Of a DNA stretch of 64,000 nt, positions 22,829 through 64,000 are shown one piece after another. Origin of the DNA: Macrostomum lignano (lineage: Eukaryota); contig NIVC01001453.1 in NCBI GenBank assembly GCA_002269645.1, positions 47,565-111,564 on the forward strand, read 5' to 3'. Position numbers and translations under genes: made by a program. The first letter of the stretch is position 1, and every line of letters begins with the position of its first letter. A model generated the notes under the pieces. It was not told where the DNA came from. It made no database searches and saw only the letters and a program-made list of their open reading frames with translations.

Positions 22829-23516
22829 CTAGTACTACTTTACTTTAAGCGACATTGTCACACAACCGGCAAGAGGCATTACTGCCCATTCCGCCGACTC
22901 CCCTAAGCAGGCACACAAGCGCGCGGATACGTACGCAGGCACACACTCACACAGGAGTGTACAGCGGCCCTAACTTTATTTATCGTTAGACATGTACATT
23001 TCAGTGTGTCTTGGTGGTTGGCTCTCAAGGACGTTAATTGCACGAGCAGAGCCAAGCCGAGATTCCAATTTGGCCCAATATTTAATGACTGCACTTGGAA
23101 TCGAGCCTGGGCCGCTGGGACATCAGACTGGGACATCATCGCTGGACCACTAGGCTACGGTTCCCCTCTAGTAGCGTCACTTCTAGACACTTCATTATCA
23201 GCTGCAGCGTTATTTTCATTTGAATTGTTTTAAGTCACTTCATTTCTAATTCCTCAAAGACTAAATGGTTATTATATTTCTTACAGTGACGTAATAAAGG
23301 TCAGTAAGTGCACAGAGGATCTGCCGATCTGCACCGGGTGCTGCCGGTTTACCATAGACAAATCGCTCGTAAGCCATTTCTTTAGTAACTTCTAGAAGCG
23401 TGAATGCTATGGCTATTGAAATATCGAAAACTTGTGAAAGTCATGGCCTAGGATTTTTTGTCTAATTAATTAATTTCAATTTTGACTGAAAACTCACCAG
23501 ACCTTCGGACATCATC

Positions 23517-30432: not shown

Positions 30433-31735
30433 TCATATTTTATGGTACACACAGTGCGTCAGATTGATTGCAGTTGTTGAACAATTTCAAAAAATCGAGT
30501 TTTAGTAATATGTGACTAGAGTACAGCCAAGAGATGAGCCAATTAGTAATAACCATAAATTCAAAAAAACTAGTTTTAAAAAACACCAGCAAATAAATAA
30601 AATTAATAAGTAGAAACGTGACGGGTTTCTGTTTTTGCAATTTTTACTAACAAAGAACCAGAATACTTTTTATTTTTGTATCTTTTATTTATGTTTCCTT
30701 CGACTTTTATGGGCAAAGTAGCACACTGTTTACTTGAGTAAAATTCTTTTGACCGATTTTATCTATTTATCGCATAATGTTCGCTCAAGCTACTATGTTA
30801 CTAAGTAGTTAAAGCGAGTGTATGATCCCGAAATACAACTGAATAATTAAAGGCAGGGCAGTAAAATAAACTAAAAAACACCTGCGTCTACTACTATTAG
30901 ACAAAACGAACCAGTAGAAAGTGTGGGATTTTAATAGTAAACCAGTATAGGGAGGGAACAACATAAAAATGACAGACTATGATAACTAAGCAACTAGAAG
31001 CAGTTAAAACAGTTGAGAAATTGCACTCTCAAAATTGTTAGTAGAATCGAAATTGCACGGGATAAAAATTGTGGAGAAAAAAAACAACAACTACGAAGGA
31101 GTTGAAAGCATGTTTTAACAAAATAATTAACTAGTGCTGGTAGGTAGCAGCATTTCACTGCAAATCCTTAGAGTTTTGAATCACATGGCCACATAGTCCC
31201 TCAGTCGTACTATTTGAAAGCAAAATTGAACGAGATTGCTACAAGCTTTGAGAGTTGTTAAACAATTCAAAATATAACTACAGCATAACAACACCTAATA
31301 CACAAATATTTGTTAACACTTTATGAATTTGAATCGCATTTCACATTTATCACAGCTCTGTTTAGTCTACTTGAGTTAGTAGGAAGTTAAGCGCCAGCAC
31401 AACGGCTCTCGGCTGACTTTTACGATTCTGCAGCTCACGTGATGCCCTCGTGACTCAACAGTCGCTAGAGTCCCTATTGAGCTGTTTGCAATGACTCTCT
31501 AGCGATTCTTATTCCAGTAACGATATTTAATAGTACATGTGTACTTTACATGTGTCTTAGTGCATAAAGTACATATTGATTTAGTTGTATAAAATTCTCA
31601 CTAATAAGTAATTTACTACTAACAGTACACGATGCACTTTATAAATATAGTCAATTTATATTAAAAGTACATGTCGACCCAAAAGCTCGAAAAGTACATT
31701 TCCCAGGTAATACAGTCAGGATTACATGCAAACAA

Positions 31736-34700
31736 TCACTTAGCCAATCCCGCTTGCAGAGCCATCTCGTAGAACACGGATGTTTTGTTAGCCAACAGTT
31801 CGCTAGGCGAGCCGGACTCGAGCACGCGACCTTGCTCTAGTACAACAATCTTATCGTAGTCCATCACCGTATTCAGCCGATGAGCCACAGTGATCAAGGT
31901 GGCGTCAGAGAATTTCTCCCTGATCGTGCGCTGAATCAGAGCGTCGGTGCCAACGTCAACGGCAGCGGTGGCTTCGTCCAGTACGAGCAGGCGGCTGCGG
32001 CGAAGCAGAGCTCGCGCTAGACAGACCAGCTGGCGCTGGCCAAGCGACAGGTTCGCTCCGCCCTCCGAGATGGGGTGGCTCAGCCCGGTCTCCAAGCCGG
32101 AGGCCCAGCTCTTCAGGTGAGCCGTCTCCAACGCCGACCAGACCTCGTCGTCAGTGTGCCGATCGAACGGGTCGAGATTCCAGCGCAGACTGCCGGCGAA
32201 CAGCAGGGGGTCCTGCGGTATCAGGGTGATCCTAGTCCGCAGCGTGTGCAGGCCGAGTTTGGTCACGTCAACGCCGTCCAGCAGCAGCTGGCCGGACCGG
32301 GGCTCCAGCACGCGGAACAGCGACAGAGTCAGGGTGCTCTTGCCTGACCCGGTGCGACCCACGATGCCAACCCGCTGGCCGGGGCTGACCTCCAGGTTGA
32401 TGTCGGCCAGGGCCGGCGGCAGGTCGTCTCGGTAGCGACAGGCGAAGCCGCGAAAGCTGACGCCGCCCAGGGGCCAGCCGTCTGGTAGGGGCGGCTCGTC
32501 TGGCCGTTGCCAGGGGGCCTCCTGCTCCAGCTCGGAGTACTCCTTGATTCTGCAGTGCGGGCGGATTGTGTGTTGCACTATGGGGACAACATAGATGGCT
32601 TCTAGCATGCATTTATGAGTGAGGGAATCTAAAGATAGGGATTTCAAGCATGGCGATCTAAAGATTGGGATTCTAGGCATGAAGATATAAAGATGGGGAT
32701 TCTAAGCATAGAATCTAAAGATGGGGATTCTAAGCAGGGGATCCAAAGATGAGGATAATAAGCATGGGGATCTAAAGCTGGGGATTATAATCATGGGGAT
32801 ATAAAGATGGGGATTCCAAGCATGGGGATCTAAAGATGGGGATTATAATCATGGGGATATAAAGATGGGGATTCCAAGCATGGGGATCTAAAGATGGGGA
32901 TATTAAACATGGGGATCTAAAGATAAGGGTTATAAGCATGGGTATTCTAAGCAAGGGATCTAAAGATGGGGATTATAATCATGGGGATATAAAGATGGGG
33001 ATTCCAAGCATGGGGATCTAAAGATGGGGATATTAAACATGGGGATCTAAAGATAAGGGTTATAAGCATGGGTATTCTAAGCAAGGGATCTAAAGATGGG
33101 GATTCTAAGCAGGGGATCCAAAGATGGGGATAATAAGCATGGGGATCTAAAGCTGGGGATTATAATCATGGGGATATAAAGATGGGGATTATAAACATGG
33201 GGATCTAAAGCTGGGGATTATAAACATGGGGATCTAAAGATAAGGGTTATAAGCATGACGATTCTAAGCAAGGGATCGAAAGATAGGTATTCTAAGCATG
33301 GGATCTAAAGTTGGGGATTATAATCATGGGGATTCTAAGCATAGATCTAAAGATGTGGATTCTAAGCATGAAATCTTAAGATGGGGATTATAAGCTTGGG
33401 AATTCTAAGCATGAGGATCCTAAGCACATAGGGATTAAGGGAGCTTAAGATCCCTGAAATGGGATAAGATAAAAATGAATTCTCACCTCTCCACGGCAAC
33501 AATATTAGTCTCCAACTCCGAAGTCATTCGGATCAGCCAATTCAGGCTCTGGGTAACGTTGAGCGCATAGATAGCGGCCAGACCTACCAGACCAGGGGAC
33601 ACGGTGCCCCTGGCCAGCACGCCAAACAGACAGGTGAATGTGACAATCAGATTGCCAACCAGCTCCAACCGGACGGCCAGCCACCTATTCGAACTAATAT
33701 TCGGATAATAGCAGCGATTGAAAAAGTTAACGCGATCGTTGCAGATTCGTTTGAAATTCGATTGCTGTTCGAATGCCCGAATAGTGGTCACGCCAGACAG
33801 GGTCTCGGAGAAGTGGGAGAAAATCGGCGACTTGGCCGTTGATTCCAGCCGCTTCAGCTGCCGGGATGAGCTGATGAAGATTCTCTGCGATTGGGGAGCG
33901 ACAGATGAAGCAGATGCTGTTTATCAATGCTGTGGTCTAACCAACTACATGCAAGCTTCAGTTAGTTGCTATGGGAACATGGCCTAGCAACAAAAGAGCA
34001 TCATCCGATCTATTATTAGTTAAAACACAAAGTGTAGGGAATTGAGACGGGGGAATTAACACAAGATAGCGGAGCTGAAAAATTGGTGAGCTGGTACAGA
34101 GTTCAGACTAAGGAATTCAGCAGGGAATTCAGAACACTGGGGAAGTGAGCCAGCGGGGAATTCAGAATTCTGGGGAAGTGAGCCAGCGGGGAATTCAGAA
34201 CACTGGGGAAGTGAGCCAGCGGGGAATTCAGAATTCTGGGGAAGTGAGCCAGCGGGGAATTCAGAACACTGGGGAAGTGAGCCAGCGGGGAATTCAGAAT
34301 TCTGGGGAAGTGAGTCAGCGGGGAATTCAGAATTCTGGGGAAGTGAGTCAGCGGGGAATTCAGAATTCTGGGGAAGTGAGCCAGCGGGGAATTCAGAATT
34401 CTGGGGAAGTGAGTCAGCGGGGAATTCAGAACACTGGGGAAGTGAGCCAGCGGGGAATTCAGAACACTGGGGAAGTGAGCCAGCGGGGAATTCAGAATTC
34501 TGGGGAAGTGAGTCAGCGGGGAATTCAGAACACTGGGGAAGTGAGCCAGCGGGGAATTCAGAACACTGGGGAAGTGAGTCAGCGGGGAATTCAGAATTCT
34601 GGGGAAGTGAGCCAGCGGGCAATTCAGAATTCTGGGGAAGTGAGCCAGCGGGGAATTAAGAACACTGGGGAAGTGAGTTCTAGCAGAAACAAAATATATA

Positions 34701-37700
34701 CTAGCACAAAAACTTGGTATAAAATCAAGGCTAGATTGATTGCAGATGCAGTGCGCAAAAAACAGTTGAAGTTGAAACGTACCAGAAAAGTAGCTGAAAA
34801 TGCAACAATTAGTGGTTAATCATCATAGTAAAATAAATAAAATTGTCCAGACAAGACAAGATAATTAAATCTACGGAGGACTAAAAACGCTGTGCGGGTA
34901 CACGGCCACCTGTACAAACAGCAGGGCAGCAATGCCCGCCAGCAGAGCCAGCAACAGGCTGACATCCAGCTGGCACAGCACCGCGGCCCGTTCCAGCAGT
35001 CCGCAGGCGGCCTGAATCAGATATCGGCAGGCCAACGCCATCTCGGCATCAACCGAGGCCAGATCGTCGGCAAAGCGCTGCAAGAATTCGCTGCCAACAG
35101 TTCGTCCGCCGCCTTTGCCATCGTCTGGAGATACAAGAGCGACAACAGGCGATTTTAGTAGGTTGGCCAGCAGGCCCCAGTAAAGGGCAACAGAGGCGCG
35201 GGTGCCGCCGACGGCTGTTAGAAACTGCGACATGAGAACGGCTATGGCTGGATAGTCGGATGGGAGCGGAAGAAAGGTAGGCCAGAGAAATACTTCAGAA
35301 AATAACGAAATGCGTACTAAAGTACATGCGTACTAAAGTACATGCGTACTAAAGTACATGCGTACTAAAGTACATGCGTACTAAAGTACATGCGTACTAA
35401 AGTACATGCGTACTAAAGTACATGCGTACTAAAGTACATGCGTACTAAAGTAAATGCGTACTAAAGTACATGCGTACTAAAGTACATGCGTACTAAAGTA
35501 CATGCGTACTAAAGTACATGCGTACTAAAGTACATGCGTACTAAAGTACATGCGTACTAAAGTACATGCGTACTAAAGTACATGCGTACTAAAGTACATG
35601 CGTACTAAAGTACATGCGTACTAAAGTAAATGCGTACTAAAGTACATGCGTACTAAAGTACATGCGTACTAAAGTACATGCGTACTAAAGTACATGCGTA
35701 CTAAAGTACATGCGTACTAAAGTACATAAAATAAGCTAACTGAAGAGTAAAGGTTACGCATTGGCAAAGTATATAACAATACGCTCGTAATATAAAATCT
35801 GTGTACCAAGCAAAACAAAAAGTGCATTACTATACACAAAATTAAAAACACAAAAAGCCACAACAATCAATAACGAAGGCAAGCAACATAAGAGGTTATA
35901 TTGTTTATATTGCAAGGTTAAGCAAAATTATTGATTTTTAATATGAATTAGCTGGTGAAAGCAACGGGGTGCGCGTGTACCCCGCATGCATTTGCGTTTT
36001 GTCTTCCATAATTACCAGTGCACAACAAGAGTTAAGAGACAAAAACACGACACCACGCAAAACCAACTAAAAGTATAAATAAAGACCTGAACGCCATGGA
36101 ACATTGCGGCAATGCCAATTAGAGCCACTAGAAACCATGGCAACGCGAAGGACACGGCAATAAGAGCCTCCAATAGCCAGAAGGCAATACGAAGCATGGT
36201 GCGCCACTTCTCGGCCAAATCGCGATCGACGCAATTCACGTCGCTGCTAAATCGATTCACGATGCGGCCCAGCGGGGTCGATTCGAAGAATGTTAGCATG
36301 CAGGCCAACACCCGGTTCAACAGGTTGTTGTGCAATAGGCGGGACGCTCTCAGACAGGCGATCGAAGAAATAAATGCGCCCCAGAAGATCGCTAGCGCTG
36401 CGTTTTGTTTGGGCGGGTGGTTTGCATTGGCGTGTATTGCGCTTTTGTAATCACTTCGAATTTACGAGCGTATTCGTTAATTTAGCAATTGCTTGGAATC
36501 GAATTTAGAATAGGCGAAAAACATTGCTAACCAAACAGCTGCGTGATGTTATTATTTTTCACAAATTAATTTCCATTTTTTTATTTTATAAAACTGAAGG
36601 ATAAAAGTGAAACCTAAAAACGGCTACAGATCCGACCTGAAGGATAGAGATGAAATCTGGAGTATAGAGGTCCAACCTGAAGGATAGAGATCAAACCTGA
36701 AGAACAGCTATATTTGTAGGTCTGAGATTACTCTGCACAATTTTTTTATTAGACGACTAGTTAACTCAAGTTGCATTCCAATAAAATTAATTTAAATTAA
36801 ACGCTTATTAACCAACCAACTATGAAAAAATGCGTTTTGCGTTTTAGTACTGGAAAAAATACCCCTTTTCAGCGCTTTAGCTAGAAAATCAGAATCAAAA
36901 TCAATTAGCACTGCTGTTGCGCAGCTTCAATATAGCAACTACAATCCATGGGATGCTGCTATGCAATTGTTATGCGCTCTACCCCAGCCACCTGTACAAG
37001 GCAGAAAGGTGCGCACAAGGCAAGACCGATCGGCAGCAGAGCCGGCGACAATCTCAACGCCGACACGGTCGTTAAACCGACAAAATTTTCCGCAACCCAG
37101 AAGCAGCTCTGTACAACCCATTTCCATCGACGCGGCATGGCAATGTCTAGGCGAGACACGTCGCCAGAGAATACGTTAATAGTCCTGCCGCAGGCGCGTA
37201 ATTCGTGCGCGTGAACAGGCTGGCGTAACAGCGAGCGCAACAGATCAGAGTGCAGTTGACGAGATGCGTGTGTGGCGCACAGCCAAATGCCAAGCATACC
37301 GACGGCTGCGTGACTGGCTGCAACAGCATATTTTTTTATGCTCCGATTATTCTACTTACAAGTAGGCTAGTTTAGGGTTTTTGAACCTCACAGGGACATC
37401 TATCAATACTCGTAACAGTTATTACCTACCTAAATATACAAACACACTAAAGTACATGGGTACGAAAGTACATACGTACTAAAGTACATACGTACTAAAG
37501 TACATACGTACTAAAGTACATACGTACTAAAGTACACGCGTAATTAAGTACATACGTACTAAAGTACATGCGTAATAAAATACATACGAATTGAAGCACA
37601 TACGTACCAAAGTACATACCAATTAAGGTGCATGTACTAAAGTACATGTACTATACGTTGGTTTAGAACTAAACAACAGATATACCAAAGTACACACGTA

Positions 37701-38715
37701 CCAAAGCATACCCGTAGCAAAGTACACGCGTTCTAAACCAAACATTTACATGCGAAATTTTACATTATCATCGAAAATTAGGGTAGCTAAAGCAGATGAG
37801 AAAATATTGCATCTTGCATTTTTTTAAATTACATACTTTTAAATAACTTATATACTCGTAAGTAGACAGAGTCAACAGACTTTTGCCTAGAAAATACACA
37901 CACAAAGTATTACAAACGACAAATGCATGTAGAGAACAAGACACCCCGTTAACTTTGTTGATTAGCGCAAAGTCATTATTAAAATTGCAATTGATTTTAG
38001 GTTATATAATATAATCTGGCTACTTGTTTGGCACTCTCTGATCACGCGTGCAGGACCTTGGCATAAATAAATACTCACTTGTATGAAATAATAGAACACA
38101 GCTACTGAAAGACAAACGGCTAGGGCTGGCAGGTAGAATAAAGTGGCAATGACAATGCCAATGCCAACCAACTGAATCAGGCTGTTGGCCAGAGATCTCA
38201 AAGTGAATGGCAGTACAAGATCTACTTCGTCTAGATCTGCACTGAATCTGGTTATGATTGGGCCGCTCAAAATGCTGGCAGAGAAACGCAAAGCTGGCCA
38301 GCTTAGCAACGAATTGAGCAGGTTTTGGTGCAGGTGCACCGATGCCAGGGTGGCGCTGAAGGCGCACTGTACGGCCCCAATGCATTCGGCAAAGCCTGTT
38401 CATGTATAGTGCATTGGTACGGTTATGGCATTGGCTGGGCACTGAGCTCTATGATACAAAAGCTGACATATTCTACACGGTAACAGTGTAGTAGTACCGA
38501 TGTAATGCTTTATTAAATAAATGAATCTACTTTTTATGATCATTAGAAACAAACGCTTGCTTAGAAAAACAATATATATGTATAGAGCAGTTAAAATCTC
38601 TTGAAACTTTGCTTATGTATCTGTGTCTATCAATTAATCACTCAATCAATCAACCTATCCAGCTACCTACCTAGCTACCAATCTACCCACCTCTATCTAT
38701 CTATCTTTATCTATG

Positions 38716-38748
<33 letters not shown>

Positions 38749-38791
38749 GTCTATCTATCTATCCATCTATCTATCTATCTATCTATCTATC

Positions 38792-38842
<51 letters not shown>

Positions 38843-38903
38843 GTCTATCTATCTGTCTATCTATCTATCTATCTGTCTATCTATCTATCTATCTATCTAT
38901 CTG

Positions 38904-38945
<42 letters not shown>

Positions 38946-38954
38946 CATCCATCC

Positions 38955-38998
<44 letters not shown>

Positions 38999-38999
38999 G

Positions 39000-39077
<78 letters not shown>

Positions 39078-39086
39078 CATCCATCC

Positions 39087-39118
<32 letters not shown>

Positions 39119-39135
39119 GTCTATCTATCTGTCTG

Positions 39136-39169
<34 letters not shown>

Positions 39170-42100
39170 CATCCATCTATCTACCTACCTATCTATCTAC
39201 GCCATCGGTCAGACTCAGCCCCATCCAGCCCCAGAGCTGGCTCACCTTGCAGCAAGCCAAACGCAGCCAGAATGCCAATCCGCTGCGGCCGGCTCCAGCT
39301 CTCAGCCAGAGGCGCAACTGTTGTGCCGTTGACTCCGCCGCCGCGACTGCTGCTTCCATTGAATTGCGCAATCCGCCTGGCGTCGTCAGTCCAGTCCACC
39401 AGCCAGAAGTTGGAGCCCAGGGACAGGCCGTGAGCGAGAATGTAGGTGATGACAACGCCCAGGCAGAAGAGCAGTCCGACAGCGCGGAAATAAGTCAGAT
39501 AGACACGCCAGTTCACCCGGCCAGTTTTGGATTTCTCCTCGTCTGTGGTTCTGAATAGCGCGTTCGCAGCGGGGGCGCCTTCGAGATTCTTCTTACTGGC
39601 GTCTGGAAATTCGGTTAGCAGGGTGTCAACTGGCCTTAGTATTGCTTGCTAAGACCTCAATTTTTCCATGGGTGCCACACACAGTCGCTGGCGCCCCCCC
39701 CCCGCGGTGCCACACCCAGTCTCTGGTGTGTTTCTCCCCGGTGCCACACCCAGTCTCTGGCGCCCCCCCCGGTGCCACACCCAGTCTCTGGTGTTTCTCC
39801 CCGGTGCCACACCCAGTCTCTGGTGTTTCTCCCCGGTGCCACACCCAGTCTCTGGTGTTTCTCCCCGGTGCCACACCCAGTCTCTGGCGCCCCCCCCCGG
39901 TGCCACACCCAGTCTCTGGCGCCCCCCCGGTGCCACACCCAGTCTCTGGTGTTTCTCCCCGGTGCCACACTCAGTCTCTGGCGCCCCCCCTGGTGCCACA
40001 CCCAGTCTCTGGTGTTTCTCCCCGGTGCCACACTCAGTCTCTGGCGCCCCCCCCTGGTGCCACACCCAGTCTCTGGTGTTTCTCCCCGGTGCCACACTCA
40101 GTCTCTGGCGCCCCCCCTGGTGCCACACCCAGTCTCTGGCGCCCCCCCGGGTGCCACACCCAGTCTCTGGCGCCCCCCCCCGGGTGCCACACCCAGTCTC
40201 TGGCGCCCCCCCCGGTGCCACACCCAGTCTCTGGTGTTTCTCCCCGGTGCCACACTCAGTCTCTGGCGCCCCCCCCCTGGTGCCACACCCAGTCTCTGGT
40301 GTTTCTCCCCGGTGCCACACTCAGTCTCTGGCGCCCCCCCTGGTGCCACACCCAGTCTCTGGCGCCCCCCCCGCGGTGCCACACCCAGTCTCTGGTGTGT
40401 TTCTCCCCGGTGCCACACTCAGTCTCTGGCGCCCCCCCCCCCTGGTGCCACACCCAGTCTCTGGTGTTTCTCCCCGGTGCCACACCCAGTCTCTGGCGCC
40501 CCCCCCGGTGCCACACCCAGTCTCTGGTGTTTCTCCCCGGTGCCACACCCAGTCTCTGGTGTTTCTCCCCGGTGCCACACCCAGTCTCTGGTGTTTCTCC
40601 CCGGTGCCACACCCAGTCTCTGGCGCCCCCCCCCGGTGCCACACCCAGTCTCTGGCGCCCCCCCCACCCGGTGCCACACCCAGTCTCTGGCGCCCCCCCC
40701 CACCCGGTGCAACACCCAGTCTCTGGTGTTTCTCCCCGGTGCCACACTCAGTCTCTGGCGCCCCCCCCGGTGCCACACCCAGTCTCTGGTGTTTCTCCCC
40801 GGTGCCACACTCAGTCTCTGGCGCCCCCCCTGGTGCCACACCCAGTCTCTGGCGCCCCCCCCGGGTGCCACACCCAGTCTCTGGCGCCCCCCCCGGGTGC
40901 CACACCCAGTCTCTGGCGCCCCCCCCCCGGTGCCACACCCAGTCTCTGGTGTTTCTCCCGGTGCCACACTCAGTCTCTGGCGCCCCCCCTGGTGCCACAC
41001 CCAGTCTCTGGCGCCCCCCCGGGTGCCACACCCAGTCTCGCCACACCCAGTCTCTGGCGCCCCCCCCGGGTGCCACACCCAGTCTCTGGCGCCCCCCCCC
41101 CGGTGCGACACCCAGTCTCTGGCGCCCCCCCCCGGTGCCACACCCAGTCTCTGGCGCCCCCCCGGTGCCACACCCAGTCTCTGGCGCCCCCCGGTGCCAC
41201 ACCCAGTCTCTGGCGCCCCCCGGTGCCACACCCAGTCTCTGGCGCCCCCCCGGTGTGGCCCACGCCCCGGTGCCACACCCAGTCTCTGGTGTTTCTCCCC
41301 GGTGCCACACCCAGTCTCTGGCGCCCCCCCCCGGTGCCACACTCAGTCTCTGGCGCCCCCCCCCCCTGGTGCCACACCCAGTCTCTGGCGCCCCCCCCCA
41401 GTGCCACACCCAGTCTCTGGCGCCCCCCCCGGTGTGGCCCCCGCCCCCGGTGCCACACCCAGTCTCTGGCGCCCCACCCTCGGTGTGCCCCCCCGGTGCC
41501 ACACCCAGTCTCTGGCGCCCCCCGGTGCCACACCCAGTCTCTGGCGCCCCCCCCGGTGTGGCCCACGCCCCCGGTGCCACACCCAGTCTCTGGTGTTTCT
41601 CCCCGGTGCCACACCCAGTCTCTGGCGCCCCCCCCCCCGGTGCCACACTCAGTCTCTGGCGCCCCCCCCTGGTGCCACACCCAGTCTCTGGCGCCCCCCC
41701 CCCGGTGTGGCCCCCGCCCCCGGTGCCACACCCAGTCTCTGGCGCCCCACCCCTCGGTGTGCCCCCCCGGTGCCACACCCTGTCTCTGGCGTCCCCCCCC
41801 CCGGTGCCACACCCAGTCTCTGGTGTTTCTCCCCGGTGCCACACCCAGTCTCTGGTGTGTTTCTCCCCGGTGCCATACCCAGTCTCTGGTGTGTTTCTCC
41901 CCGGTGCCACACCCAGTCTCTGGTGTGTTTCTCCCCGGTGCCATACCCAGTCTCTGGTGTGTTTTTCCCCGGTGCCACACTCAGTCTCTGGTGTGTTTCT
42001 CCCCGGTGCCACACCCAGTCTCTGGTGTGTTTCTCCCCGGTGCCACACCCAGTCGCTGCCATCCCTATCGGCACTACAAACCTGCAGTCTTGTCAGCAAT

Positions 42101-45100
42101 TGGACCATTGCTACTACCGACGCTAGTAGCTAGCAGAGGCGCCTTGGCGGCGTCGGTGTCATTAGCGGCGACATCATCTGGCAGTGGCTGAACACTATTC
42201 AGAGCGGCCGCAGCCAGAGAATCGGCATTGTCAACGCCAGAAACAGCTTCATCTTTGCTTTCTTCCACAGCTTCCTTTTTTTCCATTTCTTCTTTCTGAA
42301 TTTCGTCCAATATATTGAGCACAGTGTCGACATCTTCAACTGGCGGAGCAGCGCTCGGTTCAGCGTTGGTTGAGTCGGGGACAGCGGTGGCTGAGTAGTT
42401 TGTAGTGGCGTGAGCATGGTGACTGTGACTGGCCAAGAACTCACTAATCAGCTTGGCAAATGGTCCGTCGGCTTTGACTAATTGGCGAAACGTGCCAATC
42501 TCGGACACCCGGCCGTCGTTCAGGACAACAATCCGATCCACCCTGGGCAGATAGGTCAATGAGTGCGTTACTAGGACGCGAGTCTTACGGCTCAATAGGC
42601 CGGTCTCTGAGCTGATGACGCGTTCGAATATGTGCTTGCCAACGTGTACGTCAACGGCTGATAATGGGTCGTCCAACAGGTAGATGTCTTTGTCAGCGTA
42701 GCAGGCTCTTTGTTAATAGAAATGTGATGTAGGGATAGAAAGTTTTATAAAATAGTTCTATAAAACCTTATAGTCTACTATAAGTAGTTTGTTAGAATAT
42801 TTAAAAAAGCCTTTTATTCTTCTTACAAGTAGTTGACTCGTATATACCAATAAAAATCGATTTGTTTACTAAAGTAGTTTGCTTAATTATTTCAATAAAA
42901 ACCTTATAGTCTACTGCAAGTAGTTTGCTTGAATACACCAAAAAAGCTTATATTCGTAGTTTACTTTAAGTAGTTTGCTTGATTATTTCAACAAAATATC
43001 AAATAGCCTACTAAAAGTAGTCGTAGTTTACCTAAATGAATACACTTCTGATAATCAATTAGCCTACTGTAAGTAGTTGACGGAAATAAAAATACTTGTA
43101 AACATCAATTAGCCTACTAAAAGTACAGCAATTTAAAACATTTTTAGCATGATTTTCTTTTTACCTAGCCAGAGACACGCGAGCCTTCTGCCCACCGGAC
43201 AGGGTAATACCCTTCTCGCCAATCTCAGTCATATCACCGGCCTGCAGAATCTCCAGATCCCGTTCCAAAGCGCAGCAGTCAATCACTTGACGATATAGAT
43301 TCTCGTGCATCGGCGAATTAAACAGTACATTATCGCGCAGGCTCAGGTTCTGTATGAACGGCTCCTGGCTGACGTAGGCTAGCGAGCCTTTAATCAACAC
43401 TGTGCCATCCAGCTTTGTTATGTAGCCTAGCAGCGCATTTAACAGCGAGCTTTTGCCGGCACCAACTGTGCCAACAATGGCAATAAGCGAGCCGTCTTCA
43501 ATCTCCAGATTGACGTCAGAGAGAGTTGGCGCTCCGCTCGGCCCATCCCAGCTGAATTTGCCTGACTCGATTCGAAGAGCGGCTTTCTGCTCCGGTCGGC
43601 GCTTCACAGCTCGTCTGCGTAAGGGTGAAAATTTGGTGAATCAATAAATCATCTCATTTTGAAGAAGTCGCTCAAATCACTGCGTCACCCCGCATTTGCA
43701 TTGTACCAACGAAAGTGGTTGCTAACTCAGTCACTATCTCATTGCTAACTCAGTCACTATCTCACCCCTAACTCAGTCACCATCTCACTATCTCACCCTA
43801 ACTTAGTCACTATCTCACCCCTAACTCAGTCACCATCTCACCATCTCACCCTAACTCAGTCACTATCTCATTGCTAACTCAGTCACTATCTCATTGCTAA
43901 CTCAGTCACTATCTCACCCCTAACTCAGTCACCATCTCACTATCTCACCCTAACTTAGTCACTATCTCACCCCTAACTCAGTCACCATCTCACCATCTCA
44001 CCCTAACTCAGTCACTATCTCATTGCTAACTCAGTCACTATCTCATTGCTAACTCAGTCACTATCTCACCCCTAACTCAGTCACTATCTCACCCCTAACT
44101 CAGTCACTATCTCACCCCTAACTCAGTCACTATCTCATTGCTAACTCAGTCACTATCTCACCCCTAACTCAGTCACTATCTCACCCCTAACTCAGTCACT
44201 ATCTCACCCCTAACTCAGTCACTATCTCATCGCTAACTCAGTCACTATCTCACCCTAACTCAGTCACTATCTCATCGCTAACTCAGTCACTATCTCATCG
44301 CTAACTCAGTCACTATCTCACCCTAAACTCAATCACTATATATCTCACCCCTAACTCAGTCACTACCTCACCCCTAACTCAGTCACTATCTCACCCCTAA
44401 CTCAGTCACTATCTCACCCCTAACTCAGTCACTATCTCATCGCTAACTCAGTCACTATCTCACCCTAACTCAGTCACTATCTCATCGCTAACTCAGTCAC
44501 TATCTCATCGCTAACTCAGTCACTATCTCACCCTAAACTCAATCACTATATATCTCACCCCTAACTCAGTCACTACCTCACCCCTAACTCAGTCACTATC
44601 TCACCCCTAACTCAGTCACCATGTCACTATCTCACCCCTAACTCAGTCACTATCTCACCCCTAACTCAGTCACTATCTCACCCCTAACTCAGTCACTATC
44701 TCACCCCTAACTCAGTCACTACCTCACCCCTAACTCAGTCACTATCTCACCCCTAACTCAGTCACCATGTCACTATCTCACCCCTAACTCAGTCACTATC
44801 TCACCCCTAAGTCAGTCACTATCTCACCCCTAACTCAGTCACTATCTCACCCCTAACTCAGTCACCATGTCACTATCTCACCCCTAACTCAGTCACTATC
44901 TCACCCCTAACTCAGTCACTATCTCACCCCTAACTCAGTCACTATCTCACCCCTAACTCAGTCACTACCTCACCCCTAACTCAGTCACTATCTCACCCCT
45001 AACTCAGTCACCATGTCACTATCTCACCCCTAACTCAGTCACTATCTCACCCCAAAGTCAGTCACTATCTCACCCCTAACTCAGTCACTATCTCACCCCT

Positions 45101-46928
45101 AACTCAGTCACTATCTCACCCCTAACTCAGTCACCATCTCACTATCTCACCCCTAACTCAGTCATCATCTCACTATCTCACCCTAAACTCAGTCACTATC
45201 TCACCCCTAACTCAGTCACTATCTCACCCCTAACTCAGTCACTATCTCACCCCTAACTCAGTCACTACCTCACCCCTAACTCAGTCACTATCTCACCCCT
45301 AACTCAGTCACCATGTCACTATCTCACCCCTAACTCAGTCACTATCTCACCCCAAAGTCAGTCACTATCTCACCCCTAACTCAGTCACTATCTCACCCCT
45401 AACTCAGTCACTATCTCACCCCTAACTCAGTCACCATCTCACTATCTCACCCCTAACTCAGTCATCATCTCACTATCTCACCCTAAACTCAGTCACTATC
45501 TCACCCCTAACTCAGTCACTATCTCACCCCTAACTCAGTCACTATCTCACCCCTAACTCAGTCACTATCTCACCCCTAACTCAGTCACTATCTCACCCCT
45601 AACTCAGTCACTATCTCACCCCTAACTCAGTCACTATCTCACCCCTAACTCAGTCACTATCTCACCCCTAACTCAGTCACTATCTCACCCCTAACTCAGT
45701 CACTATCTCACCCCTAACTCAGTCACTATCTCACCCCTAACTCAGTCACTATCTCACCCCTAATTCAGTCACTATCTCACCCCTAACTCAGTCACCATCT
45801 CACCCCTAACTCAGTCACTATCTCACCCCTAACTCAGTCACTATGTCACCCCTAACTCAGTCACTATTTCACCCCTAACTCAGTCACTATCTCACCCCTA
45901 ACTCAGTCACCATCTCACTATCTCACCCCTAACTCAGTCACTATCTCACCCCTAACTCAGTCACCATCTCACTATCTCACCCCTAACTCAGTCACCATCT
46001 CACTATCTCACCCCTAACTCAGTCACTATGTCACCCCTAACTCAGTCACTATCTCACCCCTAACTCAGTCACTATCTCACCCCTAACTCAGTCACTATCT
46101 CACCCCTAACTCAGTCACTATCTCACCACTAACTCAATCACTATCTCACTCCTATCTCAGTCACTATCTCACCACTAACTCAGTCACCATCTCACCCCTA
46201 ACTCAGTCACCATCTCACCCCTAACTCAGTCACTATCTCACCCCTAACTCAGTCACTATCTCACCACTAACTCAATCACTATCTCACTCCTATCTCAGTC
46301 ACTATCTCACCCCTCACTCAGTCACGCAAACTCACTTATCAAGCTCGTCCAACGTTAAAAAGTTGGTCAGCCTCTTCAAAGACACGGTGCATTCCACAGT
46401 AGAATTAGCCACCATAGGCAGTATAGCCAAAGGAAAACGCAACAGATTAAATAGCGATATAGATACGAAGCACTTCTCAGCGTCAAGGATGTTATCCGGC
46501 GAACTGAGTGTGTACACCGAGAACGTGGCCAGAGACACCAGCACAGGGGTGCAGCTCCAGGCAAACGAGATACCGGCATTAAGGAAGGCCGAACGACGCA
46601 TCACGGCGATTTCTTTTTTGCGAGTGGCGCTGACCTGCGAGTATGTAGGGGGGGGGGGGCGTAGTGCTGAGGACGGTTTAGGCTGCTGCACCTGCTGCTA
46701 TCAGTTATACGAGCTACCTTTATTGTCAGACTGACCTGATATATCTTGTTCTGTCCGCTGTCTGTCTGCTGTTTTCTGTTCTTCTCTCTGCCTGCATGTG
46801 TACTGTACGCCTGTCCTATCTGTCTGTCTGTCTGTCTGTCTGTCTGTCAGCCTGTCTGTCTGTCTGTCTGTCTGTCTGTCTGCCTGTCTGTCTGTCTGCC
46901 TGCCTGTCTGTCTGTCTGTCTGTCAGCC

Positions 46929-46964
<36 letters not shown>

Positions 46965-46968
46965 AGCC

Positions 46969-47001
<33 letters not shown>

Positions 47002-47058
47002 TAGTGTCTGTCTGTCTGTGTGTGTCTGCCTGTCTTTCTTAGTGTCTGTCTGTCAGCC

Positions 47059-47095
<37 letters not shown>

Positions 47096-47240
47096 TAGTG
47101 TCTGTCTGTCTGTCTGTCTGTCTGTGTGTGTCTGCCTGTCTTTCTTAGTGTCTGTCTGTCTGTCTGTCTGTCTGCCTGTCCGTCTTAGTGCCCGTCTGTC
47201 TGTGTGTCTGTCTGTCTGTCTGTCTGCCTGTCTGTCTTAG

Positions 47241-47293
<53 letters not shown>

Positions 47294-47320
47294 GTCTGTC
47301 TGTCTGTCTGTCTGTCTGTG

Positions 47321-47371
<51 letters not shown>

Positions 47372-47372
47372 G

Positions 47373-47427
<55 letters not shown>

Positions 47428-50400
47428 GTCTGTCTGTCTGTGTGTCTGTCTGTCTGTGTGTCTGTAAGTCTGCCTGTCTGTCTATCCGCAGCCACTTACC
47501 CCCCTTACCTGTTGAGCAAACGCCAGCTCCCAGGCGTACAGTTTAATAACTCGAATACCGGCCAGTATTTCGCTTATCATTTTAATCCTCGTATCCTTGA
47601 GCTCCATCTGTTCCACTTGAAACTGTTTCATATACTTGGCCAGGACGCCGTTAATTGGGATCAGTATAATGAGCACGGCTACGCCAGCAAAGATAGACGG
47701 ACCCAGCTCTTGGTAGAGCAGCACTAAACAGATAACAATCTGCAGCGGGCCTGACCACAATATGTTAATATAGGACATCAGCTCTTGAAATTTGAACGAA
47801 TCAACCGACATTAGATTGACAATAGAACCAGTTGTAGTTGTTTTTCTAGCCTGATTAGACAGTTTCAATGATTTGTTATACACGGCGCACACTAAACTAG
47901 TTCGAATCTGCATGCCCAGCACGAATACGATGTGAAAGTACTGATGCAGGATAGCTGTCTGAACTAGACCAGCTAGGAATATCAGGCCAACATAGAAATA
48001 GCCGCGCCATTCGTACACAGCACCGGATTGCAAATATTTCAGTATGGCCTTCAATATGAGTGTGCCGGAAAAGTTCAACAGGTCGTAGAATAATTTCAAG
48101 GACACGCTTAGCAGAATCGAAGGTGCAAACATTCGGAATAGTACTTTGAGTACGATTGGGTTGAACCGGTCCGCCTGCGGCATAAAAAAAGGGGGGGGGG
48201 TACATGCGTAGTACTTGTTTCTCAATTAGCTCTTCGTGTCTGCCTCCAATCCTCAAGTCTTTGTTCCCGCTCTAATCTACATCTACTCGTATGGTGTACC
48301 TGACTGTCTATTCCTGTTGTACCTGACTGTCTATTCCTGTTGTACCTGACTGTCTATCCCTGTTGTACCTGACTGTCCATCCCTGTTGTACCTGACTGTC
48401 CATCCCTGTTGTACGTGACTGTCTATCCCTGTTGTACCTGACTGTCCATCCCTGTTGTACCTGACTGTCCATCCCTGTTGTACCTGACTGTCTATCCCTG
48501 TTGTACGTGACTGTCTATCCCTGTTGTACCTGACTGTCCATCCCTGTTGTACCTGACTGTCCATCCCTGTTGTACCTGACTGTGCATCCCTGTTGGACAT
48601 GTCTATCCCAATCCCTGTCTATCCCTGTCTGTCTATACATGTTGAATACCAGATGGACCTGTCTATCCCTGTTGGACCTGTCTATCCCTGTTGGACCTGT
48701 CTATCCCTGTTGGACCTGTCTATCTCTGTTGAATACCTGTTAGACCTGTCTATCCCTGTTGGACCTGTCTATCTCTGTTGAATACCTGTTAGACTTGTCT
48801 ATCCCTGTTAGACCTGTCTATCTCTGTTGAATACCTGTTAGACCTGTCTATCCCTGTTGGACCTGTCTATCTCTGTTAAATACCTGTTAGACCTGTCTAT
48901 CCCTGTTGGACCTGTCTATCTCTGTTGAATACCTGTTAGACCTGTCTATCCCTGTTGGACCTGTCTATCTCTGTTGAATACCTGTTAGACCTGCCTATCC
49001 CTGTTGGACCTGACTGTACTGGTATATTCCTGTTCCTGTAGTTTATTGACAGGCACTAACCATAGCGGCCTGCTCCTCCTGAGCCGGGCACAGTTTAGTA
49101 TCGTCCTTCGGCTCGTCATTGCACTGCTCAGCCGCAGGCTCAACCGATTTCATACTAACAGCGCTGCCATCCTCCGAGATCAGCCGATTTCGGAAGCGCA
49201 AACCGCGAATGCGTTGCTGTCGTCGTTGTCCATCTACTAAAACTCCGCTACCGTTAGCTTCGCCGGCAGTTTCAGATCCCAACGCCCGATTGGTGGCACA
49301 GACGTAGGCATTCCAGGCCCGTTTAAATCTGGGAAACAGATTGACGCAATCGTCTCGAGCGTTCAACTGGAATAGTGAAGCGTAGGTCAGCGGCGACCGG
49401 TAGCCGCTAAGGATTAGAGGCGTTATCCACCAGAACGATAGGCGGGATAGATAGTTTGCCGTTTTCTCTGGACAGGCGGCCAAGGCTGCCTGCTCCTGCT
49501 GATGACCAGCAGTTGCTGTCGCAGGTCTCAGACCGGATGCCGATGCAGCCACTAAGCCAGTGGCCGATAGCACTGTGTAGGCTATCAATAGGCCGAACTT
49601 TTGCGGCCACCCGTTGTACAGCTGCGGGATGTTCAATGGTGAGAGAGGGGGTGGGGTGGTAGGTAGATTAATAAAGAATAATAATCTCGATGACAACGGT
49701 TTTTAGCTAGGCCAAAAAGCGCCCCATAGTCGTTGTAGGTAACACAGGTAAAATAGGGAAGAAGTGACTCTAAAACTACGAGATGTCACGGTACACGTCG
49801 CCAAAAAAGTCGCCTAACAGTCACTTTAAAGCGTTTTATTGTCTGCGACTCTTAAAAACGTTTGTCAGCTAGACATTTGCCAGCTGACGTTAGCCAGCTA
49901 GACATCTGCCAGCTGACGTTTGCCAGCTAGACATTTTCCAGCTGACGTTTGCCAGCTAGACATTTGCCAGCTGACGTTTGCCAGCTAGACATTTTCCAGC
50001 TGACGTTTGCCAGCTAGACATTTGCCAGCCGACGTTTGCCAGCTAGACATTTGCCAGCTGACGTTTGCCAGCTAGACATTTTCCAGCTGACGTTTGCCAG
50101 CTAGACATTTGCCAGCCGACGTTTGCCAGCTAGACATTTGCCAGCTGACGTTTGCCAGCTAGACATTTGCCAGCCGACGTTTGTCAGCTAGACATTTGCC
50201 AGCCGACGTTTGTCAGCTAGACATTTGCCAGCTGACGTTTGCCAGCTAGACATTTGTCAGCCGACGTTTGCCAGCTAGACATTTGCCAGCCGACGTTTGT
50301 CAGCTAGACATTTGCCAGCCGACGTTTGCCAGCTAGACATTTGCCAGCTAGACATTTGCCAGCTAGACATTTGCCAGCTAGACATTTGCCAGGCGACGTT

Positions 50401-63000: not shown

Positions 63001-64000
63001 GGTCGGCTAACCTGATTGTGCCGATTGGATGGAGGCAGCCGGCCAAACTCCGGACAGGAGTCCCACAATTCAATTTGCATAGCCGTGCTGAACGAGCGCG
63101 AGTGTGCTGCATAAAGTAGCGCCTATCAACTGGGAACAGCTGACGCCTAACCGTCTGAGAAGCTGTGTTCAATCTCGGCCTGGAAGCCTGATGCAGCTGT
63201 TGCTGATTAGACGGCTGCTGAGGAAGCTGAGGCAGGTGGAGTACAAAGAAAATTGCCTACTCTCGTCTTCCTCTTCGCACTGTTGCTGTTGCTGCTGCCT
63301 CTGTTGCTCTTGCTGATGCTTAAACTTCATACCGTCTTTTCTGCTGTTCGCCTTAAACATTTGCTGATTGCCTAACGCTGTGTTTTCGTCAGTTTTAGCG
63401 ACTGCGGCGGCTGCTGCGGCAACGGGATGCTTGTCGTTAGAGTGGACGGTGGCCGCGGAGTTGTCGGTGAAACCAGCAGCGAGACGCTGCAAGTAGCCCA
63501 GTTTAAGACTGGCTATAAGATGTTTCTCATCTGGCACCGGCGGTGCATTGGTTGAGACGGCGAAACGCTTAGAATCCGGTTGAACCCGACAAGCGGCTGG
63601 TGATTTGGACAGCTCAGCGCTCAAGTAAAGTCGGTATGGACAGCAGAGACTTGGCCGGAGCCACTGGTGACGCTCCGACAAAACCGCCTACGGGCCAACA
63701 GCGCGCCAGCGTCGAGAGGTCGGCGACCCGCTCTGCGACGAATCTGGCGACGATGTTGAAGGCGCTAACGAAGAAGATGGCGAATTGCTAGCATTGCCAA
63801 GTTTACCCTCGCGCCTCTACCGATGGCTCCGCCGCCATTTATAGCACTATTATGATTGGCCTCGTTAGCCTGCTGGAACTGCACGTACAATCGCTTCATT
63901 CGTTTCATCTCTTTGAAGTTTTCCGGCTGCAACGGTCGATAGAGTGCGCCGCAGACGCCACAAGTTTAACAATATTTCCGCCAATAATTAGAAAACTACC
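60013..64000 (-). CDS. SLC16/MCT monocarboxylate transporter (MFS), 5'-truncated by the window; apparent frameshifts in TM6 and the central loop
   Basis: Last exon 60251-60013 (ctgtag|GC, G-HMRDSDSNYDRAFIYSG). Intron donor ATG G|gtaatt at 62466. TM7-11 lie in ORF 62438-63172 (YFWYDITYTFMPDHA, IGVSNTIGQIVIGYIGD, YGILYG, GPPAMG). The TM6 motif GSFLIIGG/ILLNL/CVCGALYRPL at 64000-63930 is split over three frames. Confidence 0.85.
60770..62360. repeat. 23-bp minisatellite (CCCTGAGAATCACTCCTGATCCA)n
   Basis: Last MCT intron. Confidence 0.95.

What the first reader, a model, noticed from the sequence alone, without database searches (positions are those of the whole stretch)
34910..38395. Four-way mutually exclusive exon cassette swapping TM13-TM15 of an MRP1/ABCC exporter
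Seen in sequence: between two constitutive exons (ending at 39246 in phase 1 and starting at 33884 in phase 0) lie four tandem homologous exons of 317, 326, 311 and 338 nt. Each has an AG acceptor and GT donor, is phase 1 to 0, and has no stops. Their lengths differ only by multiples of 3 despite heavy amino-acid divergence. All share the AS..L(H/Y)..LL..(L/V)L, RF/VF..D...(V/L)D and terminal Q pattern. Including none, two or three of them shifts the frame, so exactly one is needed. Established knowledge: this segment holds the CL6 coupling-helix region and TM14, where human MRP1 E1089 and K1092 affect substrate selectivity. Drosophila MRP has mutually exclusive exon clusters (exons 4 and 8). 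Inference: the D1084- and K1092-equivalent positions stay D and R/K in all four, while the E1089-equivalent position is F, R, E or L. One gene may therefore make four pumps with different substrate pockets. I know of no description of this in a flatworm-type genome, and it may be convergent with the insect clusters.
Basis: partly seen in the sequence, partly recalled or inferred. Interest (0 to 1): 0.92.

Follow-up and report, generated by a model that had tools for sequence, protein, structure and literature searches.

The report
Four interchangeable exons in a flatworm MRP pump
A drug-export pump gene (ABCC/MRP type) of the flatworm Macrostomum lignano carries four old, still-intact alternative copies of the exon for transmembrane helices 13-15, most likely used one per mRNA; arrays like this are already known in MRP genes of insects, nematodes and other phyla.

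Summary
On the minus strand, between constitutive exons ending at 39246 and starting at 33884, lie four homologous exons of 317, 326, 311 and 338 nt. All have AG/GT sites, enter in phase 1 and leave in phase 0, and are open only in the correct frame. The gene is a long MRP (ABCC1/2/3-like) of Macrostomum lignano.

All four copies look selectively maintained. Synonymous sites between copies are saturated, while codon positions 1 and 2 remain similar. The exons are 50-60% GC in 34-36% GC introns, and each scores against an ABCC profile. Only inclusion of exactly one exon gives a stop-free mRNA.

No RNA data were reachable, so mutually exclusive use is inferred, not shown. The two public protein models chain C and D through non-homologous splice sites. 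That adds three helices and would invert the topology of the rest of the protein, so it is probably an annotation artefact.

A stick-insect MRP locus has a tandem exon array at the same segment, with the same upstream intron position and phase. Published work already describes independent MRP exon arrays across phyla. I rate this a new member of a known kind, of moderate interest. Unusual points are the 27-34% identity between variants, the loss of the coupling-helix motif in three of them, and a 47-nt intron-intron duplex bracketing B and C.

The parts
39246..39602 (-). Upstream constitutive exon (TM12 region). It ends ...AAFGLLQ plus 1 nt, in phase 1.
   Evidence: It is 98% identical to P0002, and the donor is CAAG|GTGAGC.
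38079..38395 (-). Variant exon A, 317 nt. The E1089 equivalent is F. It is closest to human MRP1.
   Evidence: Pfam ABC_membrane 29.3 bits; 57.3 bits alone against the ABCC profile.
36992..37317 (-). Variant exon B, 326 nt. The E1089 equivalent is R.
   Evidence: 32.2 bits; 43.8 bits; AF2 model pLDDT 85.
36087..36397 (-). Variant exon C, 311 nt. It is the most canonical copy ([17 protein letters not shown]). The E1089 equivalent is E. It is the one present in the public protein models.
   Evidence: 39.1 bits; 103.7 bits.
34910..35247 (-). Variant exon D, 338 nt. It has a 9-residue Gly-rich insert at the coupling-helix loop. The E1089 equivalent is L. Alternative sites used by the public models are an acceptor at 35224 and a donor at 34889.
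   Evidence: 21.2 bits; AF2 model; insert pLDDT below 50, the rest above 85.
33487..33884 (-). Downstream constitutive exon ([15 protein letters not shown]..., CL7 to TM16/17), starting in phase 0.
37911..37957 (-). 5' arm of a 47-nt intron-intron complement. It lies in intron A-B, about 120-165 nt downstream of the A donor.
   Evidence: I1; -48.8 kcal/mol; z = -5.0 against 45 real-sequence controls.
35957..36003 (-). 3' arm of the same complement. It lies in intron C-D, about 85-130 nt downstream of the C donor. Pairing would loop out exons B and C.
31748..49702 (-). Extent of the ABCC/MRP gene seen in the window: L0 lasso exon, TMD1, NBD1, TMD2 and NBD2 to the stop. MSD0 exons, if any, lie further upstream and were not mapped.
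   Evidence: (L0 motif matching MRP1 207-269).

Best explanation
This is a tandem array of four anciently duplicated exons in a long-MRP (ABCC1/2/3-like) gene of Macrostomum lignano.

What each exon encodes: a complete alternative version of TM13, the CL6 coupling-helix loop, TM14 and TM15, equal to human MRP1 G1027-Q1130.

How it most likely works: the array is used by mutually exclusive splicing, one exon per mRNA.
- Exclusivity is enforced at least by the reading frame. Every exon is 2 mod 3, so 0, 2, 3 or 4 inclusions all produce a premature stop and should be removed by nonsense-mediated decay.
- The weak donors of B, C and D and an intronic RNA duplex bracketing B and C may help with the choice.

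Expected products: up to four pumps that share both ATPase domains and 14 of 17 helices. They differ in pocket-lining TM14 residues (E1089 equivalent F/R/E/L; M1093 equivalent S/W/T/Y) and in the loop that couples TMD2 to the NBDs.

Shown here: the anatomy, the homology, the frame logic and long-term purifying selection on all four copies.

Inferred: the actual one-at-a-time splicing, NMD of the other combinations, and differences in substrate range.
For: Anatomy and phases.

Homology: z = 7-10.

Only single inclusion is stop-free.

Selection on every copy:
- Open frames have probability 0.011-0.040 each.
- The correct frame has the best codon score in all four.
- The exons are 50-60% GC against 34-36% in the flanking introns.
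- Where two variants share an amino acid they share the codon in 60 of 166 cases. Codon usage alone predicts 63.8, so synonymous sites are saturated.
- Nucleotide identity at codon positions 1 and 2 is z = 2.4-6.6 above a permutation null. At position 3 it is z = 0.4-3.1.

Family signal:
- Pfam ABC_membrane passes its cut-off for A, B and C taken alone.
- An ABCC TMD2 profile gives 57, 44, 104 and 21 bits for A, B, C and D alone, and 59-137 bits over the flanks-only score. Shuffled exons add nothing.

Fold: AF2 models of the B and D isoforms keep the TMD2 helices, with TM-score 0.79-0.83 to MRP2/MRP1.

Precedent at the same place: the Timema podura MRP locus has four tandem homologous exons for the same segment, with the same upstream intron position and phase.

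Literature.
Against: - No transcript evidence was reachable.
- No protein among about 15 billion contains A or B, and none is a close relative of A, B or D.
- The only two public models of this locus (UniProt A0A1I8FHP8 and A0A1I8HTH2) contain C and D together.
- A, B and D have lost the near-universal FF(D/E)xTPxGR coupling-helix motif that all four Timema variants keep. D also fails Pfam on its own. This could mean relaxed constraint.
- The in-frame codon score of B is about zero.
- No common docking site with a selector next to each variant was found.
- The amino-acid-guided alignment slightly favours codon positions 1 and 2 in the test.
Confidence: 0.66

Rival explanations
1. Only exon C is used. 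A, B and D are relics of old exon duplications that are no longer spliced in (pseudo-exons).
For: C is by far the most family-like copy and is the one in the public models. A, B and D lack the FFxxTPxGR motif. No database protein holds A or B.
Against: - Synonymous sites between copies are saturated, so the duplications are old.
- Even so, all three keep open frames (joint chance about 1e-5), AG/GT sites, indels only in multiples of three, exon-like GC in AT-rich introns, and excess identity at codon positions 1 and 2, also among A, B and D themselves.
- Neutral relics of that age should have none of these features.
- Very recent inactivation cannot be excluded.
Confidence: 0.14
2. C and D are both constitutive or cassette exons included in tandem, as in UniProt A0A1I8FHP8 and A0A1I8HTH2. 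In those models D uses the acceptor at 35224 and the donor at 34889.
For: Two public models have this structure. AG at 35226-35225 and GT at 34888-34887 exist. The 35224-34889 version is 336 nt and keeps the frame after C.
Against: - The models are automated predictions (UniProt A0A1I8 series). One is patched around frameshifts.
- Homology to C, A, B and human ABCC2 runs from the 35247 acceptor to the Q at 34910. The exon ends after that Q in the Schistosoma, tick and Timema loci too.
- The cassette holds three membrane helices. A second copy would therefore place CL7 and NBD2 on the wrong side of the membrane. This is an inference from the accepted MRP1 topology.
- With the homologous sites, C followed by D hits a stop after one codon.
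- Gene predictors also break at the Timema array.
Confidence: 0.05
3. The exons are alternative but not strictly exclusive or equivalent. For example, only two (such as A and C) make working pumps. B or D inclusion would then serve mainly to produce non-functional or regulatory, NMD-coupled transcripts.
For: Family-likeness falls in a gradient C > A > B > D. D has a disordered 9-residue insert at the NBD-coupling loop. B has a neutral codon score. B, C and D have weak donors.
Against: B and D still show excess identity at codon positions 1 and 2 and keep intact frames. Regulatory poison exons need no conserved protein sequence. The AF2 models keep the fold, though those models are driven by the alignment.
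Confidence: 0.15

Closest known systems
Arthropod MRP variable-exon array (Drosophila melanogaster MRP/CG6214 'exon 8' cluster of 7-8 mutually exclusive exons). It was examined here in the Timema podura locus L005.
   Same: - The same protein segment is involved. The four Timema tandem exons align to positions 1-75 of the M. lignano cassette (TM13, CL6 and the start of TM14, including the E1089 equivalent, which also varies: S/N/H/Q).
- The intron before the array sits at the identical codon and in phase 1.
- The intron after ...Q is identical in position and is in phase 0.
- D. melanogaster MRP is listed with an 8-exon MXE cluster in PMC6071210.
   Different: - The insect variable exon is about 222 nt, followed by a separate constant exon for the rest of TM14-15. 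The flatworm unit is one 311-338-nt exon.
- The Timema variants all keep the FFDTTPxGRI motif and look much more alike than the flatworm variants (27-34% identical). I judged this by eye from the sequences and did not compute it.
- The insect arrays are reported to use docking and selector RNA pairings (PMC6071210). No such common docking site was found here.
- Common or independent origin was not resolved here.
Metazoan MRP1 tandem-exon survey (Yue et al. 2017, RNA Biol 14:1399) and C. elegans mrp-1.
   Same: - These are tandem homologous exons in MRP1-type genes used by mutually exclusive splicing.
- They are described as arising independently in several phyla (PMC6071210 and PMC7434440).
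- The fly mrp and worm mrp-1 events coincide in the same structural region (PMC9741552).
- From my memory of the abstract, Platyhelminthes are among the phyla listed.
   Different: I could not read the paper. Whether M. lignano, this exon or a four-member array was described there is therefore unknown. A Schistosoma margrebowiei ABCC locus, a Pristionchus locus and a tick locus that I examined have no duplicate of this segment.
Frame-enforced mutually exclusive exon pairs (exons whose length is not a multiple of three, with double inclusion or skipping removed by NMD).
   Same: All four exons are 2 mod 3, and every combination other than single inclusion meets a premature stop.
   Different: NMD of such transcripts in M. 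lignano is assumed, not shown. Most textbook cases are pairs rather than four-member arrays.

Membership tests
Mutually exclusive (tandem-duplicated) exon cluster | Adjacent exons in one intron-bounded slot that are homologous to each other. | tested here: met
   There are four copies with pairwise z = 6.9-10.5. All were found by tblastn with each other and with human MRP1/ABCC2, and there is no fifth copy.
Mutually exclusive (tandem-duplicated) exon cluster | Same entry and exit phase, compatible lengths, and intact splice sites on every copy. | tested here: met
   All four enter in phase 1 and leave in phase 0. Lengths are 317, 326, 311 and 338 nt, all 2 mod 3. All have AG acceptors and GT donors.
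Mutually exclusive (tandem-duplicated) exon cluster | Each copy is maintained by selection as coding sequence. | tested here: met
   The evidence is open frames, the codon score and GC contrast, saturated synonymous sites, codon positions 1 and 2 more similar than position 3, and profile scores. D is the weakest.
Mutually exclusive (tandem-duplicated) exon cluster | Exactly one copy is present in each mature mRNA. | not testable with these tools
   No RNA-seq or cDNA was reachable. No database protein contains A or B. The two public models hold C plus D through non-homologous sites. Only the frame logic supports exclusivity.
Docking-site / selector competing-RNA-structure mechanism (Dscam exon 6, arthropod MRP, 14-3-3zeta, Mhc) | One docking sequence in a flanking intron that is complementary to a selector sequence next to each variant. 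| tested here: not met
   - In the duplex scan of the flanking introns against the three internal introns, the best 'pairs with all three' window is within the shuffle range.
- The D-donor by intron C-D pair has z = -2.9, and 1 of 45 controls is as strong.
- The outer I0 by I4 pair has z = -0.2.
- Only one pair (37957-37911 by 36003-35957) is significant, and it joins two internal introns.
- No related species were available to test conservation.
Long MRP / ABCC1-2-3 type exporter | A TMD2 of the ABCC type most similar to ABCC1, ABCC2 and ABCC3. | tested here: met
   phmmer against the PDB gives ABCC2 at 2.4e-70, MRP1 at 7.7e-66 and ABCC3 at 5.9e-62, without gaps in exon C. Foldseek gives TM-scores of 0.79-0.83.
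Long MRP / ABCC1-2-3 type exporter | An L0 lasso motif and two nucleotide-binding domains. | tested here: met
   The L0 motif matches MRP1 207-269 in ORF 49046-49702. NBD1 exons lie at 43640-43164 and 42709-42083, and NBD2 at 32551-31748, by tblastn. P0002 carries PF00005.
Long MRP / ABCC1-2-3 type exporter | An N-terminal MSD0 (TM1-5). | not tested
   Exons upstream of 49702 were not mapped.

The most novel reading that the evidence does not exclude
The flatworm array is not just another substrate-pocket switch.

Three of the four variants have replaced the otherwise near-invariant FF(D/E)xTPxGR coupling-helix motif, and D carries a 9-residue Gly-rich insert there. All three are still under purifying selection. 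One gene would then make isoforms with different TMD-NBD coupling, for example pump versus regulator or channel-like behaviour, as seen between ABCC paralogues such as CFTR and SUR.

The choice would be structured by a 47-nt intronic duplex that loops out the inner pair (B and C) from the outer pair (A and D). That architecture differs from the docking-selector scheme.
Probability: 0.12. Interest if true: 0.65.

Novelty: new member of a known kind. Interest (0 to 1): 0.36.

Why it matters
- If the four exons are used as inferred, one M. lignano gene yields up to four MRP pumps. They would differ in TM13-15 and in the NBD-coupling loop. That is relevant to xenobiotic handling in a flatworm model in which MK571- and probenecid-sensitive efflux has been measured (PMC3826144).
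- It adds a very divergent example to the recurrent, apparently convergent duplication of this one MRP exon slot across animal phyla.
- It shows that the current public protein models of this locus are mis-built. They chain C and D, and A and B are unannotated.
- It offers a compact four-exon system for testing frame/NMD-enforced versus RNA-structure-enforced exclusivity outside arthropods.

Tried and rejected
- **Transcript evidence.** A concatenated query (upstream exon, A, B, C, D, downstream exon) against 5.8 billion protein clusters found only two M. lignano models, neither holding A or B. Exact look-ups of those models found no contig.
- **Close relatives.** An exhaustive HMMER search of 1.84 billion representatives with A+B+D found no close relative of any variant, so no orthologue-based dN/dS was possible.
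- **Literature.** Yue et al. 2017 is not held under its DOI or PMC id. Searches for flatworm or Macrostomum MXE papers returned nothing specific.
- **Other ABCC loci.** Loci from Schistosoma margrebowiei, Pristionchus and Amblyomma show no duplication of this segment. The Zophobas locus was not informative. Mya arenaria was not on record.
- **Docking-selector search.** No shared docking site was found. The outer I0 by I4 pairing was rejected at z = -0.2. The D-donor by intron C-D pairing is not significant.
- **Transposon origin of the 47-nt complement.** No extended similarity between the introns and no other copy in the window.
- **A fifth degenerate copy.** None found.
- **AF2 models.** They keep the fold but are driven by the alignment, so I count them as weak evidence only.
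- **My own error.** My first Schistosoma tblastn mixed two loci in one file. I redid it.
Full report
**What is there**

The finding lies on the minus strand. The upstream constitutive exon (39602-39246) ends CAAG|GTGAGC with one base left over, so it ends in phase 1. The downstream exon begins at 33884 after ...TCGCAG, in phase 0.

| Exon | Coordinates | Length | Donor |
|---|---|---|---|
| A | 38395-38079 | 317 nt | GTGAGT |
| B | 37317-36992 | 326 nt | GTGGCT |
| C | 36397-36087 | 311 nt | GTCTTT |
| D | 35247-34910 | 338 nt | GTGGCC |

- Each is preceded by AG and followed by GT.
- Each is 2 mod 3.
- Each is open only in the frame set by the upstream exon. The two other frames hold 1-9 stops each.
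- The constitutive donors of the gene are mostly GTAAG or GTGAG. The donors of B, C and D are weaker, as is common for regulated exons.

**Is it more than chance?**

- The four peptides align end to end with z = 6.9-10.5 against shuffles, at 27-34% identity. They are as far from each other as from human MRP1 or ABCC2.
- tblastn finds exactly four copies in the window.
- The chance of a stop-free frame in a shuffled exon is 0.011-0.040. That is about 1e-5 jointly for A, B and D.

**What gene and organism**

- The flanking exons and exons C and D are 95-100% identical to two UniRef proteins of Macrostomum lignano.
- With exon C, the segment aligns without gaps to human ABCC2 (2.4e-70), MRP1 and ABCC3.
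- An L0 lasso exon lies at 49046-49702.
- NBD1 and NBD2 exons are present down to a stop near 31748.
- On the 8vt4_A numbering the cassette is G1027-Q1130. By the usual MRP1 topology (my knowledge of the UniProt annotation) that covers TM13, CL6 with the coupling helix, TM14 and TM15.
- The D1084 equivalent is D in all four variants. The E1089 equivalent is F, R, E and L. The K1092 equivalent is R, K, R and R. The next residue varies as well: S, W, T and Y. From memory of the bovine MRP1-LTC4 structure, its human equivalent M1093 lines the hydrophobic pocket.

**Are A, B and D alive or relics?**

This was the main question, because C is clearly the canonical copy. It scores 103.7 bits alone against a profile of 38 ABCC TMD2 homologues, against 57.3 for A, 43.8 for B and 21.2 for D. 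Pfam scores are 39, 29 and 32 bits for C, A and B, with nothing for D. Several independent observations say all four have been kept by selection.

1. Open frames and splice sites are intact, and all length differences are multiples of three.
2. The exons are 50-60% GC islands in introns of 34-36% GC. The correct frame has the best codon-usage score in all four, although B's score is only about zero.
3. Where two variants encode the same amino acid, they use the same codon in 60 of 166 cases. Codon usage alone predicts 63.8, so synonymous sites are saturated and the duplications are old.
4. Nucleotide identity at codon positions 1 and 2 still exceeds a permutation null by z = 2.4-6.6 in every pair, including A-B, A-D and B-D. 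Position 3 is near the null at z = 0.4-3.1. A copy drifting neutrally for that long would have lost this pattern. One caveat is that the alignment was guided by amino acids, but it is almost gapless and anchored at both exon ends.
5. Swapping in a shuffled exon adds nothing to the profile score. The real exons add 59-137 bits.
6. AF2 models of the B and D isoforms keep the TMD2 helices (pLDDT 85 and 84). Only D's 9-residue Gly-rich insert at the coupling loop is disordered. The D model superposes on MRP2/MRP1 with a TM-score of 0.79-0.83. This is weak evidence, because the alignment drives the model.

**Exclusivity**

I built all 16 combinations. Only the four single inclusions are stop-free. 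Skipping all four, any two, any three and even all four (which restores the frame at the end) run into a premature stop. So the frame alone would make any other product a candidate for nonsense-mediated decay. This part is inferred.

**The public models**

UniProt A0A1I8FHP8 and A0A1I8HTH2 chain C and D. They do this with an acceptor at 35224, a donor at 34889, and in one case a donor inside C next to frameshifts. I regard these as predictor artefacts, for four reasons.

- Homology to the other variants and to human ABCC2 starts exactly at 35247 and ends at the Q at 34910.
- The exon ends after that Q in Schistosoma, a tick and a stick insect as well.
- The cassette contains three membrane helices. 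A second copy would put CL7 and NBD2 on the wrong side of the membrane. This is an inference from the accepted topology.
- The Timema annotation is also broken at its array.

The 34889 donor remains a possible alternative end for D. It also keeps D at 2 mod 3 (359 nt).

**RNA structure**

- A scan for a docking site shared by all variants found nothing beyond shuffles.
- One pairing stands out. Positions 37957-37911 in intron A-B pair with 36003-35957 in intron C-D as a nearly continuous 47-nt duplex of -48.8 kcal/mol. That is z = -5.0 against 45 real non-coding segments of the window, whose best value is -41.7.
- The duplex is not part of a longer repeat and occurs nowhere else in the window. 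It would loop out B and C together.
- The same intron C-D element can also pair with the D donor region (34911-34875, -39.6 kcal/mol). That is not significant: z = -2.9, and 1 of 45 controls was stronger.
- An outer pairing between the first and last introns is at chance level.
- Without related species I cannot test conservation, so I treat the 47-nt duplex as a candidate regulator only.

**Comparison with what is known**

- PMC6071210 lists D. melanogaster MRP with an 8-exon MXE cluster. It cites Yue et al. 2017 for multiple independent exon duplications in metazoan MRP genes across phyla, and for docking-selector pairings in insect MRP.
- PMC7434440 cites the same paper for mrp-1 mutually exclusive splicing arising independently in helminths, annelids and molluscs.
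- PMC9741552 notes that the fly mrp and worm mrp-1 events coincide in the same structural region.
- From memory, the abstract of Yue et al. names Platyhelminthes. I could not open the paper.
- I tested the 'same segment' question directly on the stick insect Timema podura, locus L005. Four tandem exons (5758-5979, 9847-10068, 14441-14662 and 22918-23142) all align to positions 1-75 of the flatworm cassette. They are followed by one constant exon for the rest, ending ...YYFIQ, and then the [15 protein letters not shown] exon.
- In Timema the intron in front of the array is at the same codon and phase (1) as in M. lignano. The intron after Q is at the same place and phase (0).
- The Timema variants keep the FFDTTPxGRI motif and also vary the E1089 equivalent.
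- Three other ABCC loci (Schistosoma margrebowiei, Pristionchus and Amblyomma) have a single copy of the segment.

**Verdict**

- The interpretation as a four-way mutually exclusive cassette is the best-supported reading, at about two in three. It rests on selection signatures and frame logic, not on RNA.
- The claim of novelty is only partly right, because this kind of array in MRP genes is a described and recurrent phenomenon. I file it as a new member of a known kind.
- Three points are unusual. The variants are extremely divergent. Three of them have replaced the coupling-helix motif while still under constraint. A single strong intron-intron duplex takes the place of a docking-selector set.

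Noticed in passing
window 35310-35727 and 37446-37647: A 16-nt minisatellite (GTACTTTAGTACGCAT on the minus strand) occurs only in intron C-D (about 26 copies, 99% matches) and intron A-B (about 13 copies, 79% matches). Both arrays are in the same orientation, and the unit occurs nowhere else in the 64 kb. The unit is quasi-palindromic, so the two arrays could also pair weakly. It may mark a two-exon duplication unit (A+B to C+D), but the amino-acid identities do not clearly support that.
   Followed up: partly
window 31000-50000 (introns of the ABCC gene): Almost every intron of the gene is filled with a different tandem repeat:
- (TCTA)n at 38692-39199
- a 33-nt unit at 34118-34677
- a 32-34-nt GC-rich unit over 2.4 kb at 39671-42058
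- a 23/46-nt unit over 2.6 kb at 43722-46325
- (TCTG)n at 46750-47483
- a 29-nt unit at 32623-33426

Several of these create long spurious open reading frames.
   Followed up: no
UniProt A0A1I8FHP8 (P0001) and A0A1I8HTH2 (P0002) against window 34889-36397: Both public M. lignano models join exon C to exon D through non-homologous splice sites, and they omit A and B. P0002 also carries local frameshifts (CPSRCH, FLRRSGS) that look like assembly indels. The locus is mis-annotated in public protein sets.
   Followed up: yes
L005 (Timema podura CAJPIN010000163.1) 5758-27389: The stick-insect MRP locus holds at least four tandem variable exons for TM13-CL6. The deposited annotation splits the gene into two models at the array, with one variant in the upstream model and the others in the downstream one.
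   Followed up: partly
window 14649-17419, minus strand: Three ORF segments match Pfam Otopetrin (E = 4e-40, 3e-14 and 4e-6). They indicate an otopetrin proton-channel gene downstream of the ABCC gene.
   Followed up: no
window 62441-63256, minus strand: An ORF matches the Major Facilitator Superfamily (MFS_1, E = 5e-16). It is probably part of another transporter gene upstream of the ABCC gene.
   Followed up: no
window 42083-42709, minus strand: The exon for the end of NBD1 and the linker is only 74% identical to P0002, whereas the neighbouring exons are 95-100% identical. The cause was not examined. It could be assembly indels in the older model or real divergence in the linker.
   Followed up: no
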